NCBI RefSeq assembly: GCF_000142905.1 | Contig: NW_013657656.1 | Coordinates: 282,991-346,990 of the forward strand | Length of the DNA: 64,000 nt | Direction: 5' to 3' | From: Thecamonas trahens ATCC 50062 | Taxonomy: Eukaryota > Protista > Apusomonadida | Part shown: piece after piece, positions 23,366-61,422 of the stretch | Layout of the letters: each line of letters begins with the position of its first letter | How positions within the stretch are numbered: the first letter of the stretch is position 1 | The notes under the pieces: generated by a model | What the model was told of the DNA's origin: nothing | The model's database searches: none | Seen by the model: only the letters and a program-made list of their open reading frames with translations | Made by a program: the position numbers and the translations under genes

Positions 23366-23740
23366 NNNNNNNNNNNNNNNNNNNNNNNNNNNNNNNNNNN
23401 NNNNNNNNNNNNNNNNNNNNNNNNNNNNNNNNNNNNNNNNNNNNNNNNNNNNNNNNNNNNNNNNNNNNNNNNNNNNNNNNNNNNNNNNNNNNNNNNNNNN
23501 NNNNNNNNNNNNNNNNNNNNNNNNNNNNNNNNNNNNNNNNNNNNNNNNNNNNNNNNNNNNNNNNNNNNNNNNNNNNNNNNNNNNNNNNNNNNNNNNNNNN
23601 NNNNNNNNNNNNNNNNNNNNNNNNNNNNNNNNNNNNNNNNNNNNNNNNNNNNNNNNNNNNNNNNNNNNNNNNNNNNNNNNNNNNNNNNNNNNNNNNNNNN
23701 NNNNNNNNNNNNNNNNNNNNNNNNNNNNNNNNNNNNNNNN
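23366..23740. other. Assembly gap (N run)
   Basis: 375 N. Confidence 1.
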
Positions 23741-56353: not shown

Positions 56354-56453
56354 NNNNNNNNNNNNNNNNNNNNNNNNNNNNNNNNNNNNNNNNNNNNNNN
56401 NNNNNNNNNNNNNNNNNNNNNNNNNNNNNNNNNNNNNNNNNNNNNNNNNNNNN
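56354..56453. other. Assembly gap (100 N)
   Basis: N run. Confidence 1.
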
Positions 56454-56859: not shown

Positions 56860-57326
56860 GTAATGGTCATCCTTCGGATGATCTCGGCCCTCATCCTCCT
56901 CACACATTCATTCATCGATCTTGATGACGCAAGTCACCGTCGATGCCAATGAGCCATGGTCGTCGGTGCCTCTAGCCATGGTCAAGCCCATCCACCTACT
57001 GATCGCCATCACCATCACGCACATCGTCATCGCCACCCCCACCGTCCTCCTCCTCTTCCACCACCACTCGTTTGGTTGTTTCTTAAGAGGGCTGACGTCT
57101 CTGAAACCGCGGCGGAATAGTGCGGCACAAGCTGGACTGGCAGGACGGATCGAGTCGCGAGCACGGCCAAATCGTCAAGTCCGCACACCTCTCTTCACAA
57201 AGACACATAACCTGCAGAGGAGTATTTGCAGGTGCTGACACACATTCTCTCTATCTTTTTCTCTTTCTCTCTCTCTCTCTCTCTCACCCCTCATCCCACG
57301 CGTCTCGCTGCTCATCACCGTTACAG

Positions 57327-57896
57327 CGGCTGGAGCGAAAGACCAAGGAGACCGAAGTGATGGTGGAGCTGTGTTTGGATGGAAGTGGGAGTGCCGAGGT
57401 GGAGACTGGTATTGGTTTTCTGGATCACATGCTCACGGCCCTGGCCAAGCACGCTCGCTGGGATCTTGTTCTGACGTGTGACGGTGACCTGCATGTCGAC
57501 GATCATCACACGGTCGAAGACTGCGCCCTCGTTCTGGGCTCGGCCTTCAAGGCCGCTCTTGGCACTGTGGCCGGCATCGCTCGCTTTGGACATGCCTATT
57601 GCCCGCTCGATGAGTCACTCTCGCGGGCAGTCGTCGACATCTCAGGTCGCCCGCACGCTACAGTCGACATCGATTTCAAACGCGAGAAGATCGGGGAGCT
57701 CTCGACTGAGATGATCCCGCATGTCTTTACCTCGTTTGCTTCGACTGCTGGCATCACCATCCATGTCACCAACCTCTACGGCGCCAACGACCACCACAAG
57801 GCCGAGTCGGCGTTCAAGGCTGCCGCCGTCGCCCTCCGCGCCGCACTCACCCGCGACAACTCTGCCGGTGTGCCGTCGACCAAGGGCGTTCTCTAG
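57327..57896 (+). CDS. HIS3: Imidazoleglycerol-phosphate dehydratase, main exon (first exon upstream not resolved)
   Basis: RKTKET, TGIGFLDHML, DDHHTVED, PLDESL, NDHHKAESAFKA, VPSTKGVL. Confidence 0.95.
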   Translation, partial: RLERKTKETEVMVELCLDGSGSAEVETGIGFLDHMLTALAKHARWDLVLTCDGDLHVDDHHTVEDCALVLGSAFKAALGTVAGIARFGHAYCPLDESLSRAVVDISGRPHATVDIDFKREKIGELSTEMIPHVFTSFASTAGITIHVTNLYGANDHHKAESAFKAAAVALRAALTRDNSAGVPSTKGVL

Positions 57897-57905
57897 GTAA
57901 ACATC

Positions 57906-58514
57906 TTATTCATCGCCGAGTCCAAGGTGTGCCGCGATGGCTGCGTCGTAGTCGCGAGTCCGCTTAAAGGCAGTGCGGGCAAGCGCCCGGCGGGTGGCGT
58001 ACGACACGCTGCCACCAGACGAGGTCATCTCGTCCGCGACGGCTTTGTACTGCGCCGGATCGACGACCACGGTGACGCCCTCGCAGAACGCCTTGGCCGC
58101 TGCGCGGATCATGGTCACGCCACCGATGTCAATCTCGTCAGTAACTGCCGAGTCGGAGAGCCCAGCACGGCCTGCAACCACCGTCTCAAACGGATACAGG
58201 TTGCAGACGACGAGGTCGATGGCGCCGATGCCGTGGGCGGCAGCCTCGACAACGTCAGCGTCGACAGACCGCCGCATGAGTAGGCCACCATGGATCAGCG
58301 GGTGCAGCGTCTTGACTCGCCCACCAAACACCTCCGGAAAGCCCGTCACCTCCTGCACCGCAGTCACCGCAAGGCCCGCAGCCTCGAGCGTCCGTGCCGT
58401 CCCGCCCGTGCTCACAATGGTCACCCCGACAGCTACCAGAGCTTGACAGAGCTCAACCACGCCGGTTTTGTCCGCCACAGACACCAGCGCCCGCTTCACC
58501 ATACTCTCCGACAT
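57906..58514 (-). CDS. purH: Stand-alone IMP cyclohydrolase (PurH N-terminal/MGS-like domain)
   Basis: RALVSVADKTG, STGGT, GRVKTLHP, NLYPF, IDIGGVTMIRAAAK, YDAAI, then a stop. Confidence 0.92.
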   Translation of the reverse strand: MSESMVKRALVSVADKTGVVELCQALVAVGVTIVSTGGTARTLEAAGLAVTAVQEVTGFPEVFGGRVKTLHPLIHGGLLMRRSVDADVVEAAAHGIGAIDLVVCNLYPFETVVAGRAGLSDSAVTDEIDIGGVTMIRAAAKAFCEGVTVVVDPAQYKAVADEMTSSGGSVSYATRRALARTAFKRTRDYDAAIAAHLGLGDE

Positions 58515-58943
58515 GCTGTTTCTAAGAGTCAAGTTGTTGTATCCCCTTCTCGCCACTTGAGCTCACGCCTTGCTTGTTGCCTCGCCAGCCCGGTCAGAGT
58601 ACCGTGTTACTTTTTTTTGGCCCTCCGCACTGTCCCGCACATCACTGCCGTCACAGCGCCCATGTGCTTGTTCTAGGCATGCTACGAGGCGACATGGCAG
58701 AAAGTACAATGCAGAGCCACAAAGCAGAGGGTATGGGCAGGAGAGCTAGCCTGAAGGCAGAGGGAAAGAGGTGAGGCGGCTACCTGTGGAACGTTCGAAT
58801 GGAATGCTGCCCTCAACTCTCCCACTCTGCACGCTTCGGCGTCAGCCAACTGAGAGCTCAGGTGAGCGGCAGTCAGCCCAGAGCTACCCAATTGCAGAGC
58901 GAGTCGGCCACCTCTCGACGGATACCAGGACCAGGTTGACGAC

Positions 58944-60197
58944 ATGGCAGACAAGACAGCGAGCGTGGAACTCAAGTACGGGTGTAACCCGTACCAAGTA
59001 CCGGCGACGTACGAGGTGACGGCCGACAGCGACGGCCGGCTCCCGTTCCATGTCCTCAACGGGACACCTGGCTTTATCAATCTCCTCGACGCGCTCAACG
59101 CATGGCATCTGGTGGCCGAACTGGCGGAAGCGACGGGCTTTGACGCAGCGGCATCGTTTAAGCATGTTTCGCCGGCAGGCGCAGCCATCTCGGCTTTTCC
59201 GCTCACAGACGCCGAGGCAGCCGCGTATGAGATCGCGGACCCTGCTGGCCTCGAGGGCCCGGCCCTGGCCTACGTTCGGGCGCGCAACGCGGATCCCAAG
59301 TCGTCGTTTGGCGACTTTATCGCCATTTCGGGCACAGTCGACGAGGCTGCGGCCAAGGTCATCAAACCGCATGTCTCGGACGGCATCATTGCGGCCGACT
59401 ATGACGAGGCCGCGCTCACGCTGCTGTCGGCTAAGAAGGGCGGCAAGTTTGTGGTACTCAAGGCCGATCCGGCGTACCATCCGCCCGAGATGGAGGACCG
59501 ACTTGTCCACGGCGTGCGGATGCGACAGAAGCGCAATGTGGAGAGCGTTTCGCCTGATGAGCTCCGCGGATGCGTGACCAATGCCGACGACGCGGCACGG
59601 CTGACCAGCGCCGCCCTGCTCGACCTCACCGTTGCGTCGATCGCTATCAAGTACACCCAGTCAAACTCGGTCGGATACGCCATCCGCGGGCAGATGATCG
59701 GTATCGGAGCCGGACAGCAGTCGCGGATCGACTGCACGCGGATCGCCGGTGACAAGGCCGCGGTCTGGTGGCTCCGCCAGCATCCGCGGGTTCTCGGGCT
59801 CAAGTTTGCCAAGGGTGTCAAGCGGCAGGCGCGGGTCAACGCGCGAGTTGAGTTCCTTGCCATGTCGCCGGATCCTGCTGTCAACGCTGTGCTCGTCAAC
59901 GAGGCGCAGATGGCGCGATTCAACGCGCAGCTCGAAGAGACCGAGCTCGACACCGACCCGCTCTCGCAGGTCGAGCGCGCCATCTTTATCACAAACTCGG
60001 CCCGCGATGCCGGTGGGGTGGCGCTCTGCTCGGATGCCTTCTTCCCCTTTCGCGACTCGATCGAAGAGGCGGCCCGCCATGGCGTGGCCTGGGTTTTGCA
60101 GCCTGGCGGGTCGGTCCGCGACGACGAGGTCGAGGCTGCATCGCGCGCGTACGACATGGTCATGATCAAGAACGGCAAGCGAACGTTCCACCACTGA
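58944..60197 (+). CDS. purH: Stand-alone AICAR transformylase (PurH C-terminal domain)
   Basis: LKYGCNPYQ, FINLLDALN, SFKHVSPAGAA, KYTQSNSV, GAGQQSRIDC, SDAFFPFRD, QPGGS, RTFHH. Confidence 0.94.
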   Translation: MADKTASVELKYGCNPYQVPATYEVTADSDGRLPFHVLNGTPGFINLLDALNAWHLVAELAEATGFDAAASFKHVSPAGAAISAFPLTDAEAAAYEIADPAGLEGPALAYVRARNADPKSSFGDFIAISGTVDEAAAKVIKPHVSDGIIAADYDEAALTLLSAKKGGKFVVLKADPAYHPPEMEDRLVHGVRMRQKRNVESVSPDELRGCVTNADDAARLTSAALLDLTVASIAIKYTQSNSVGYAIRGQMIGIGAGQQSRIDCTRIAGDKAAVWWLRQHPRVLGLKFAKGVKRQARVNARVEFLAMSPDPAVNAVLVNEAQMARFNAQLEETELDTDPLSQVERAIFITNSARDAGGVALCSDAFFPFRDSIEEAARHGVAWVLQPGGSVRDDEVEAASRAYDMVMIKNGKRTFHH

Positions 60198-60285: not shown

Positions 60286-61422
60286 TTAGGCGCAGGCGTC
60301 AACGTCGCGTGCAACGTCGTCGTCGACGAGCGCGGGTGCCGCCGGGCGCTCCAGACCGACGACCGACTCGCGGGCGTCCGACTTGGCGGGTGAGGGCGAC
60401 TTGGGAAGGCCCGGCGCCTCCGAGGCGGAGACCGACGAGGAGGCAAAGAGGGCGGCATCGGCAAGGATGTCGTCGCGGGAAATCGACTTGATCGAGCGCA
60501 TCTGGGCATACTGGCGTGAGATGGTGGCGGCCATCTCCTCGGCGGAGCAGTAGGTTGACCAGTCAACCTTGAGCACCGGAATGTACTTGGAGATGTCATC
60601 GATGAACTTGTTGTAGCCGGCGTACAGCTGGCGGAGGTACTCGATGGGGATGAGCGACTCGCACTCGCGCCCGCGCGACTTAATCCGCTCGTAGCTCTCC
60701 TCGGGCGTCACATCGAGGTGCACAATGAGGTTCGGCTTCCGCATAAAGTTCGACATGTTCTCAAACAGCTCAAGGTCTACATTCAGGGCGAGTTAGTGGC
60801 GTGACGGGGAAGGGAAGGAAGAGGGGAGGGGTAGGGTGATCTCATCATGACAACGTACAGGTATCAAAGTCGCGCTCGTCCATCTTGCCGTCGTCCTTGA
60901 GCATGCGAGCAAAGACGAGGTCCTCATAGATGGAGCGATCAGCAATACCACCCGCCTTGGACCAAATGATCTGCTGCTGCTGCTCAAAGCGCTTGTTGAG
61001 GAGGTAGACCTGGAGCGGGAAGGAGTACTTTGCCTGGTCAGCGTAAAAGTCCTCCAAGTACACGTTCTCCGCCACGGGCTCGTGGAAGACAGGCAAGCCC
61101 ATCTCCTTTGACAGCGCATCCGCCAATGTTGTCTTGCCGGCACCTAGTTCCTTTCATAAGTGAGTCTGATGTCATGCCCATGGTTGTGCCTTTAATCCTG
61201 CTGGGTAGCTGGGCCATAAATAATGCCGCGAGGGTTAGCGCAAGGTAGAATCTACACTGACCGGCACGAGGTCACCCTTGCCCCCCGCCCCCCACCCCCC
61301 ATGGCACCCACGCCATGGGAAGTGGAAGAGTACCAGCAAGAAGAAAGGTGGGAGGGTAGTCAATGCGTACCAATGAGGCCCGAGATGGCAATGAACAGCT
61401 TCTCTCCGTAGGCAGAAGACAT
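60286..61422 (-). CDS. Deoxynucleoside kinase (dAK/dGK-like); exons 61422-61371, 61143-60859, 60776-60286
   Basis: Spliced P-loop ISGLIGAGKTT, FYAD, DRSIYED, RIKSRGRECE lid motif. Confidence 0.9.

What the first reader, a model, noticed from the sequence alone, without database searches (positions are those of the whole stretch)
57906..60197. PurH/ATIC split into two head-to-head genes sharing a ~430-bp promoter
Seen: a complete IMP-cyclohydrolase domain ORF (minus strand, own stop) and a complete AICAR-transformylase ORF (plus strand, own ATG) lie divergently. Known: in most eukaryotes and bacteria these form one bifunctional polypeptide (ATIC/ADE16/17/PurH). Inference: inverting [promoter + N-domain] of a fused gene gives exactly this geometry, i.e. 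fission by inversion with a bidirectional promoter. Alternatively two separately acquired genes were clustered; the KYGCNP start resembles stand-alone bacterial AICAR transformylases. The usual AAAKN motif of the cyclohydrolase reads AAAKA.
Basis: partly seen in the sequence, partly recalled or inferred. Interest (0 to 1): 0.8.

Follow-up and report, generated by a model that had tools for sequence, protein, structure and literature searches.

The report
Split PurH/ATIC gene pair in Thecamonas
In the protist Thecamonas trahens the normally fused enzyme ATIC/PurH is encoded as two separate back-to-back genes next to a histidine gene, and because the rest of purine synthesis was not found in the genome, the pair probably recycles the AICAR released by histidine synthesis.

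Summary
An intact 202-aa IMP cyclohydrolase gene (57906-58514, minus) and an intact 417-aa AICAR transformylase gene (58944-60197, plus) diverge from a 429-bp spacer. The genome is Thecamonas trahens and has no other PurH-type copy. Catalytic residues are conserved.

The split is old. A marine-metagenome relative (63-65% identical) also has two separate genes, but they are not head-to-head there.

In the trees both halves sit beside a bacterial purJ-purV operon (L031; IMPCH 97/87, concatenated 91/84). AU tests do not reject a common origin with fused eukaryotic ATIC (p 0.14-0.27). No opisthokont sequence could be put into the trees.

A further result changes the likely function. PurC, PurD, PurE, PurM/L and PurO were not found in the genome. 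Histidine synthesis is present, as a 1720-aa seven-domain fusion plus the IGPD gene that ends 9 bp from the cyclohydrolase. The pair therefore most likely converts histidine-derived AICAR to IMP.

Split purJ/purV is already described in prokaryotes. I found no paper describing it in a eukaryote. The scan had noted this same stretch once before (s1-751792), not on other DNA.

The parts
57906..58514 (-). Stand-alone IMP cyclohydrolase gene (PurJ/PurH2-like), 202 aa, no intron
   Evidence: ORF with its own ATG and TAA stop. It matches PF02142 plus the N-terminal part of PF01808. It scores 232-244 bits on the N-terminal 190 positions of the PurH models. The catalytic positions are invariant or nearly so among 446 homologues and are kept here: R66 (446 of 446), K68 (445), T69 (442), Y107, D129 and K141 (446 each). 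The NCBI model AMSG_05669 (P0121, 172 aa) replaces the conserved C-terminus with unrelated residues.
58515..58943 (.). 429-bp divergent intergenic region; a putative shared (bidirectional) promoter
   Evidence: This is the distance between the two ATGs. GC is 0.57, against 0.64 in both genes. tblastn finds no relic of an IMPCH domain in it. Promoter activity is inferred and was not tested.
58944..60197 (+). Stand-alone AICAR transformylase gene (PurV-like, 'long' ATIC-type), 417 aa, no intron
   Evidence: ORF with ATG and TGA stop. NF005492 452.6 bits, above the 415 cut-off. It scores 341-353 bits against the human, chicken and Cryptococcus ATIC C-domains, versus 64-120 bits against classical bacterial PurH. 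The FKHVSP Lys-His motif and the C-terminal FHH are present. The NCBI model P0001 (449 aa, 'ADE17') has a wrong C-terminus.
57321..57896 (+). Imidazoleglycerol-phosphate dehydratase (HIS3/HisB) 3' exon, convergent with IMPCH; the two stop codons are 9 bp apart
   Evidence: PF00475 7e-62. The best solved relative is 6fwh at 276 bits, then fungal IGPDs at 230 bits, and the remaining listed IGPD chains at about 176 bits or less. Spacing. The true start lies upstream and was not determined. IGPD uses the co-product (IGP) of the AICAR-releasing step of histidine synthesis.

Best explanation
Two separately encoded, functional enzymes replace bifunctional ATIC in Thecamonas trahens. One is a PurV-like AICAR transformylase, which makes FAICAR from AICAR and 10-formyl-THF. 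The other is a PurJ-like IMP cyclohydrolase, which makes IMP from FAICAR. They are transcribed divergently from a 429-bp shared upstream region, which would keep their expression coupled.

The enzymes that make AICAR de novo were not found in the genome, while histidine synthesis is present. The pair therefore most likely serves as the AICAR-to-IMP recycling branch of histidine biosynthesis. This fits its position next to the IGPD gene.

Origin (inferred, leaning only): an ancestor of T. trahens and its marine relative acquired a bacterial purJ-purV operon. One cistron was later turned so that each gene had its own upstream region.

Shown: gene integrity, conserved catalytic residues, absence of a fused copy, the age of the split, and the absence of matches to upstream purine enzymes.

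Inferred: enzyme activities, promoter sharing, the AICAR-recycling role, and the direction and source of transfer.
For: Gene integrity and domain content.

Catalytic residues conserved.

Only copy in the genome. No PurO.

The split is shared with a relative that carries the same lineage-specific insertions; the two are sisters at 100/100 in both trees.

Unfused PurH2 and separately produced human domains are active, and ATIC shows no channelling (PMC6797443). purV/purJ replaces purH in about 44 bacterial genomes (PMC6486802).

Bacterial affinity:
- The metagenomic operon L031 has a stand-alone IMPCH (P0125, 60% identical) that overlaps by 4 bp a long-type AICARFT (56% identical).
- In the IMPCH tree the Tt clade groups with P0143 and P0125 at 97/87.
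- The concatenated tree gives (L031,(Tt,relative)) at 91/84.
- Residues shared by Tt and the relative with the bacterial split set but with no eukaryotic fused protein, versus the converse: 20 versus 1 in IMPCH and 22 versus 9 in AICARFT.
- Tt IMPCH scores 200-215 bits against bacterial proteins, versus 146-163 against opisthokont ATIC.

Function:
- No PF01259 or PF00731 match, and no PF01071 match above cut-off. The only AIRS-domain gene is SelD. The same searches hit 14 of 14 control genomes.
- HisH-F-A-I-E-D-G lie in one 1720-aa ORF, and IGPD is adjacent.
- AICAR from IGP synthase is normally recycled by PurH (PMC5919458).
Against: AU tests do not reject a common origin with fused eukaryotic ATIC (p 0.27, 0.135, 0.25).

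No opisthokont, amoebozoan or other apusomonad sequence could be put in the trees; only PDB bit scores were available.

The AICARFT half carries the eukaryote-typical RARNADP residue, which is absent from all 16 bacterial sequences compared.

Both genes have host-like GC3 (0.74-0.78) and sit among ordinary eukaryotic genes.

The nearest bacterial proteins are only 56-60% identical, so no donor can be named.

The bacterial comparison set is more diverse than the eukaryotic one, which inflates the count of shared residues.

Absence of the upstream purine genes rests on six-frame family searches of one draft assembly.

No expression data are available.
Confidence: 0.5

Rival explanations
1. In-situ fission. 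An ancestral fused eukaryotic ATIC gene was broken at the domain boundary by inversion of the promoter plus the N-domain. This left two divergent genes that were inherited vertically. Their bacterial look comes from fast evolution and thin eukaryotic sampling.
For: The genes are adjacent, and the break is exactly at the domain boundary.

The AICARFT half is the long ATIC type and keeps the eukaryote-typical RARNADP residue.

AU tests do not reject Tt plus eukaryotes as one clade.

The AICARFT branch is long: a stem of 0.8 plus an end branch of 0.3.

Another eukaryote shows what looks like a true fission nested among fused relatives. The MMETSP transcript P0392 has an unrelated 45-aa N-terminus and is sister to the fused P0045 at 100/97.

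GC3 is host-like and the neighbours are eukaryotic.
Against: The IMPCH half has a short branch (0.18), yet it is 55-60% identical to bacterial proteins and only 42-49% identical to eukaryotic N-domains.

It lacks the one-residue deletion that the five eukaryotic N-domains shown in the alignment share.

Best trees place both halves with bacteria.

Tt AICARFT scores lower against opisthokont ATIC (341-353 bits) than against stramenopile or bacterial proteins (414-429 bits). This is the opposite of what vertical descent within Obazoa predicts.

The head-to-head layout is absent in the relative.
Confidence: 0.28
2. Hybrid origin. The AICARFT gene is the surviving C-terminal half of the ancestral ATIC. 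Its N-domain was lost after a bacterial purJ (IMPCH) gene was acquired and came to lie next to it.
For: The bacterial signal is strong for IMPCH (97/87; 20 versus 1 shared residues) but ambiguous for AICARFT (88/87 with a single bacterial protein; 22 versus 9; RARN is eukaryote-like).
Against: It needs an unexplained insertion of the acquired gene right beside its functional partner.

There is no relic of an N-domain upstream of AICARFT.

Both genes of the bacterial operon L031 are among the closest relatives of the two halves.
Confidence: 0.12
3. Artefact or decay: a mis-assembled local inversion of a fused gene, or one or both halves are pseudogenes.
For: Draft assembly with gaps (N runs at 23366-23740 and 56354-56453). 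Both reference gene models are faulty.
Against: Each ORF is uninterrupted, has its own start and stop, and keeps its conserved termini and catalytic residues.

An independent assembly confirms the junction of the IMPCH 3' end with IGPD.

The same split occurs in a 63-65% identical relative on separate contigs.
Confidence: 0.02

Closest known systems
Prokaryotic purJ (IMPCH) plus purV (AICARFT) gene pairs that replace purH (Genome Biol Evol 2019, PMC6486802)
   Same: The two PurH domains are encoded as separate genes of about 200 and 390-420 aa, and no fused purH is present. Sometimes the genes are adjacent in an operon, for example metagenomic L031 with a 4-bp overlap.
   Different: The host is a eukaryote. 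The genes are divergent rather than co-directional. The context is a histidine gene rather than pur genes. The paper surveyed prokaryotes only.
Archaeoglobus fulgidus AF1811, a naturally unfused PurH2 IMP cyclohydrolase (PMC6797443)
   Same: A stand-alone MGS-fold IMPCH, shown to be active and to complement an E. coli purH mutant together with a PurH1 domain.
   Different: It is archaeal, is partnered with PurP rather than an AICARFT domain, and is distant in sequence.
Eukaryotic bifunctional ATIC (human 1P4R, chicken 1G8M, Cryptococcus 7MGQ; yeast Ade16/17)
   Same: Same two catalytic domains. The AICARFT half is the same 'long' type: 341-353 bits over residues about 203-592. The IMPCH half scores 146-163 bits.
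   Different: ATIC is a single polypeptide. Here the domains are on opposite strands. The Asn after the catalytic Lys of IMPCH is Ala. The AICARFT carries lineage-specific insertions of about 13 residues.
Other unfused eukaryotic homologues seen here: the Diacronema lutheri tandem double IMPCH (P0241) and the MMETSP stand-alone AICARFT transcripts (P0392/P0019, P0115)
   Same: These are eukaryotic genes or transcripts that encode only one PurH domain type.
   Different: Their tree positions differ. The Diacronema IMPCH sits with a classical bacterial PurH at 93/88. The MMETSP AICARFTs sit inside the fused eukaryotic clade. No partner gene or adjacency is known for them.

Membership tests
Bifunctional PurH/ATIC (TIGR00355, NF002049) | IMPCH and AICARFT domains in one polypeptide | tested here: not met
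   The domains lie in two ORFs on opposite strands, each with its own start and stop. There is no other PF01808 or PF02142 locus in the genome.
Bifunctional PurH/ATIC (TIGR00355, NF002049) | Whole-protein score at or above the curated cut-off (528 bits for TIGR00355) | tested here: not met
   232.4 bits for IMPCH and 265 bits for AICARFT.
Stand-alone AICAR transformylase (PurV; NCBIfam NF005492/PRK07106) | Full-length match above the 415-bit cut-off, with no IMPCH domain in the same ORF | tested here: met
   452.6 bits over positions 3-390 of 390. An in-frame stop lies 26 codons upstream of the ATG. Caveat: the model does not separate bacterial from eukaryotic long-type domains. Fused P0106 and P0041 score 542-548 bits.
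Stand-alone AICAR transformylase (PurV; NCBIfam NF005492/PRK07106) | Catalytic Lys-His pair (human K266/H267) and conserved C-terminal FHH | tested here: met
   FKHVSPAGAA and ...RTFHH align with ATIC structures and with all long-type homologues.
Stand-alone IMP cyclohydrolase (PurJ/PurH2) | A protein of about 200 aa with an MGS-like domain plus the short N-terminal PF01808 segment | tested here: met
   PF02142 over residues 32-148 and PF01808 positions 1-57. 202 aa with its own stop.
Stand-alone IMP cyclohydrolase (PurJ/PurH2) | Conserved active-site residues (RVKTLHP, NLYPF, IDIGG, and the Lys of AAAK) | tested here: met
   All are present. These columns are invariant or nearly so in 446 homologues. 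The following Asn (412 of 446) is Ala here and Gly in the relative; other natural PurH proteins carry Ser, Ala, Gly or Thr there.
Stand-alone IMP cyclohydrolase (PurJ/PurH2) and PurV | Enzymatic activity of each separate protein | not testable with these tools
   Needs an assay or complementation. The precedent is PMC6797443.
Bidirectional-promoter gene pair | Divergent start codons less than 1 kb apart | tested here: met
   429 bp.
Bidirectional-promoter gene pair | Two divergent, co-regulated transcripts arising from the shared region | not testable with these tools
De novo purine biosynthesis pathway (final two steps) | Upstream enzymes that make AICAR (PurD, PurM, PurL, PurE, PurC) are present in the genome | tested here: not met
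   There is no match for PF01259 or PF00731, and PF01071 matches only below its cut-off. The sole AIRS-domain ORF is SelD (TIGR00476, 192 bits). The same searches hit 14 of 14 control genomes. Absence from a draft assembly is not proof.

The most novel reading that the evidence does not exclude
Thecamonas is a purine-auxotrophic but histidine-prototrophic eukaryote. It has discarded ATIC together with the rest of de novo purine synthesis. It keeps only a bacterial-derived, split purJ/purV pair, physically linked to HIS3, as a dedicated AICAR-recycling or detoxifying branch of histidine biosynthesis. If so, this is a natural eukaryotic exception to the 'ATIC is always fused' rule, created by operon transfer and then 'eukaryotised' by turning one cistron to share a bidirectional promoter.
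Probability: 0.4. Interest if true: 0.6.

Novelty: new variant of a known kind. Interest (0 to 1): 0.5.

Why it matters
Outside archaea, ATIC/PurH is described as nearly always fused (PMC6797443). Here the two halves persist as separate genes in a free-living eukaryote lineage, over at least the divergence that 63-65% identity represents. This fits the biochemical finding that ATIC shows no substrate channelling.

The locus also offers a natural system for asking how a bacterial bicistronic unit, or a broken fusion, becomes two independently expressed eukaryotic genes.

It points as well to an unusual metabolic layout: histidine synthesis retained, purine synthesis lost, and the last two purine steps kept for AICAR recycling.

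Gene fusion and fission characters have been used as phylogenetic markers around the apusomonads (from my own knowledge, not checked here). An ATIC split could be a new marker for the group if it is confirmed in other apusomonads.

Tried and rejected
1. Misassembly. Rejected: both ORFs are intact, an independent contig (L035) confirms one junction, and the split is shared with a relative.

2. A second, fused copy or a PurO enzyme elsewhere in the genome. None found.

3. A relic of an IMPCH domain in the 429-bp spacer. None; all tblastn E-values are above 0.03.

4. The NF005492 hit or the KYGCNP motif as evidence of bacterial origin. Rejected as non-discriminating.

5. The four-gene block as a bacterial island. 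Rejected. IGPD is closest to 6fwh (which I recall, unchecked, to be an amoebozoan entry) and then to fungal structures. The dNK gene has a GT-AG intron and no NCBIfam hit.

6. The third homology search, seeded with Mastigamoeba ATIC to collect Amorphea sequences. It returned only bacterial classical PurH, so no opisthokont sequences entered the trees.

7. The metagenome scan with a Tt plus relative profile. It gave 80 bacterial purV loci at 45-50% identity, none with an MGS-type IMPCH in the flanks, and no new apusomonad-like locus. The 11 genome loci likewise had no adjacent IMPCH.

8. L116, a purN-purJ-purV operon. Its AICARFT is the classical type, only 29% identical, so it is not a donor candidate.

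9. Three protein-atlas calls failed because the machine was busy.

11. AU tests. None was significant, so the origin question stays open.

12. No complex prediction was run, because I do not claim that the two proteins bind each other.
Full report
**What is there.** The window is contig C24 of Thecamonas trahens ATCC 50062, an apusomonad with a 28.7-Mb genome.

- On the minus strand, 57906-58514 is an uninterrupted 202-aa ORF. It has an ATG, a TAA stop, and an in-frame stop 16 codons upstream of the ATG. It matches the MGS-like domain (PF02142) plus the first 57 positions of PF01808, which is a complete IMP cyclohydrolase (IMPCH) domain.
- On the plus strand, 58944-60197 is an uninterrupted 417-aa ORF. 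It has an ATG and a TGA stop. An in-frame stop lies 26 codons upstream with no start codon between. It matches PF01808 positions 76-311 and the stand-alone AICAR transformylase model NF005492 over its full length, at 452.6 bits against a 415 cut-off.
- The two ATGs are 429 bp apart.
- These are the only PF01808 and PF02142 matches reported in the genome, and there is no PurO.

**Is it real?** Yes, on three grounds.

- A mis-assembled inversion of a fused gene would not leave proper start and stop codons on both pieces.
- An independent ENA assembly (L035) reproduces 910 bp at 100% identity across the IMPCH 3' end and the convergent IGPD gene.
- Two marine-metagenome samples (ERZ908065 and ERZ17173254) each contain a stand-alone AICARFT (P0002, 421 aa, 65% identical) and a stand-alone IMPCH (P0389/P0390, 204 aa, 63% identical), on separate contigs.

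These metagenome sequences are sister to the Thecamonas proteins at 100/100 in both trees. They share lineage-specific features: a one-residue insertion and loss of the Asn after the catalytic Lys in IMPCH, and about 13 inserted residues in AICARFT. The IMPCH contig of this relative carries a divergent 335-aa gene with no Pfam match that has seven paralogues in T. trahens, which suggests a related protist. The split is therefore old. It is not head-to-head in the relative, because the gene upstream of IMPCH there is not AICARFT.

**Are the genes functional?**

- The IMPCH active-site residues in the RVKTLHP, NLYPF and IDIGG motifs and the Lys of AAAK are conserved. The key catalytic columns are invariant or nearly so among 446 homologues.
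- The Asn that usually follows that Lys (412 of 446) is Ala here and Gly in the relative. Ser, Ala, Gly and Thr occur naturally elsewhere, so this is a tolerated variant and not a sign of decay.
- The AICARFT keeps the catalytic Lys-His (FKHVSP) and the C-terminal FHH.
- Both NCBI gene models are wrong at their C-termini. AMSG_05669 is 172 aa and 'ADE17' is 449 aa, and each invents an intron that removes conserved sequence.
- Published work shows that a naturally unfused PurH2 is active, that human PurH1 and PurH2 work when made separately, and that ATIC does not channel its intermediate (PMC6797443).

**What type are the halves?**

- The AICARFT half belongs to the 'long' type found in eukaryotic ATIC. 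It scores 341-353 bits against human, chicken and Cryptococcus ATIC residues about 203-592, versus 64-120 bits against classical bacterial PurH.
- Bacterial stand-alone proteins of the PRK07106 family belong to the same tight group. SAR324 and other bacterial proteins score 421-476 bits against opisthokont ATIC, as high as a C-domain-only protein from the eukaryotic fused clade (439-465 bits).
- Fused eukaryotic proteins score higher on NF005492 than Thecamonas does. The model hit and the KYGCNP motif therefore say nothing about origin.
- The IMPCH half is 55-60% identical to many bacterial proteins, both stand-alone and classical fused. It is only 42-49% identical to the N-domains of long-type fused eukaryotic proteins, and it scores 146-163 bits against opisthokont ATIC.

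**Origin.**

- AICARFT tree (51 rows, careful search): the Thecamonas clade sits with the bacterial stand-alone protein P0053 (88/87), outside a clade of 21 eukaryotic sequences (87/71).
- IMPCH tree (62 rows): the clade sits with bacterial P0143 and P0125 (97/87). The 19 eukaryotic N-domains form their own clade (100/97).
- P0125 lies in a metagenomic contig (L031). There it overlaps by 4 bp a downstream long-type AICARFT that is 56% identical to the Thecamonas protein. This is a bacterial purJ-purV operon.
- Concatenated tree: (L031,(Thecamonas, relative)) at 91/84, sister to the fused eukaryotes.
- Residues shared by Thecamonas and its relative with the bacterial split set but with no eukaryote, versus the converse: 20 versus 1 in IMPCH and 22 versus 9 in AICARFT.

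Against this:

- AU tests do not reject uniting the Thecamonas clade with the eukaryotes (p 0.27, 0.135, 0.25).
- One AICARFT residue (RARN) is eukaryote-typical.
- The bacterial set is more diverse than the eukaryotic one.
- No opisthokont, amoebozoan or other apusomonad sequence could be brought into the trees. My third homology search, seeded with Mastigamoeba ATIC, returned only bacterial-type PurH.

I therefore lean to acquisition of a bacterial purJ-purV pair (about 0.5) over in-situ fission (about 0.28) or a hybrid history (about 0.12). Both main models explain the adjacency, and both need one inversion to give the head-to-head layout. The spacer holds no relic of a lost domain. GC3 is host-like (0.74-0.78), so whichever event occurred is old.

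**What the pair does.** I searched the genome for the enzymes that make AICAR de novo.

- There is no match for SAICAR synthetase (PF01259) or PurE (PF00731).
- GARS (PF01071) matches only below its cut-off.
- The single AIRS-domain ORF is selenophosphate synthetase, so PurM and PurL are missing as well. Each of these searches hit all 14 control genomes.
- Histidine biosynthesis, by contrast, is present. One 1720-aa ORF on contig C2 carries HisH, HisF, HisA, HisI, HisE, HisD and HisG domains.
- The IGPD (HIS3) gene lies in this window, convergent with IMPCH, with only 9 bp between the two stop codons.
- IGP synthase (HisFH) releases one AICAR per histidine, and PurH normally recycles it to IMP (PMC5919458).

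The most economical reading is that Thecamonas, a bacterivore, has lost de novo purine synthesis but keeps the last two steps to recycle or detoxify histidine-derived AICAR. This role is inferred and not shown, and absence from a draft assembly needs confirmation.

**Comparison with what is known.**

- Split PurH is documented in prokaryotes as purJ plus purV: 44 bacterial genomes of 1,403 prokaryotic genomes surveyed, sometimes in operons (PMC6486802). It is also documented in Archaeoglobus (PMC6797443).
- I found no paper describing it in a eukaryote. Searches for Thecamonas with purine biosynthesis, for purV with purJ, and for gene fission found nothing relevant.
- Thecamonas is not the only eukaryote with unfused homologues. 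Diacronema lutheri encodes a tandem double IMPCH in an ordinary eukaryotic context. MMETSP transcripts encode stand-alone AICARFT with unrelated N-terminal extensions, nested among fused relatives.
- The Thecamonas case differs in three ways: both halves are present, adjacent and divergent; they lie beside a histidine gene; and the genome lacks the rest of the pathway.

**Verdict.** The fission-by-inversion interpretation is possible but not favoured. I class this as a new variant of a known kind, of moderate interest (0.5). The scan had noted the same stretch once before (s1-751792), not on other DNA.

Noticed in passing
G000:C2:614054-619216 (L120:1555-6717, minus strand): A single 1720-aa open reading frame carries seven histidine-pathway domains in the order GATase (HisH), HisF, HisA, PRA-CH (HisI), PRA-PH (HisE), histidinol dehydrogenase (HisD), and HisG plus HisG_C. 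From my own knowledge, fungi spread these over four genes (His7, His6, His4, His1), so this fusion looks unusually large.
   Followed up: partly
whole genome G000: De novo purine synthesis upstream of AICAR appears to be absent. There is no PurC or PurE match, and PurD matches only below its cut-off. The only AIRS-domain gene is SelD (G000:C3:662485-664215), so there is no PurM or PurL.
   Followed up: partly
window 57906-58514 and 58944-60197: Both reference gene models are wrong at the C-terminus. AMSG_05669 (172 aa, 'uncharacterized') and 'ADE17' (449 aa) each replace the conserved end with unrelated residues. The uninterrupted ORFs match homologues end to end.
   Followed up: yes
window 60286-61126 (minus): A deoxynucleoside kinase gene in two exons, with an 88-bp gap between the two ORFs and GT...AG at the intron ends (about 60757-60844). 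It is convergent with AICARFT, 88 bp beyond its stop. No NCBIfam model matches it.
   Followed up: partly
window 57120-57360: The IGPD ORF has no ATG before the conserved N-terminal motif (RKTKETEV). A pyrimidine-rich stretch precedes it, so a short upstream exon probably exists. The start was not determined.
   Followed up: no
L028:10001-11203 (Diacronema lutheri JAGTXO010000012.1): A 400-aa protein made of two nearly identical tandem IMP cyclohydrolase domains, with no AICARFT domain, among ordinary eukaryotic genes (myosin, COG3, an ammonium transporter). Its domains group with a classical bacterial PurH at 93/88.
   Followed up: partly
P0359 (Mastigamoeba balamuthi, EukProt): Its 589-aa ATIC is of the classical bacterial PurH type. 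Its nearest relatives are bacterial MAG proteins at 50-52% identity, and it is not the long eukaryotic type. It is a candidate for bacterial-to-eukaryote transfer.
   Followed up: no
L116:383-3482: A bacterial purN-purJ-purV operon with 4-bp gene overlaps. The classical-type AICARFT in it is fused to a C-terminal TPR-repeat region, giving a 614-aa protein.
   Followed up: partly
window 23366-23740 and 56354-56453: Assembly gaps (runs of N of 375 and 100 bases). The second lies 1.45 kb from the locus and does not touch it.
   Followed up: yes
trees: Eukaryotic long-type ATIC C-domains and bacterial stand-alone PRK07106 proteins form one tight family that is far from classical bacterial PurH (branch of about 2-3 substitutions per site). 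In these rooted trees the eukaryotes nest among the bacterial long-type sequences. This bears on the origin of ATIC itself.
   Followed up: no
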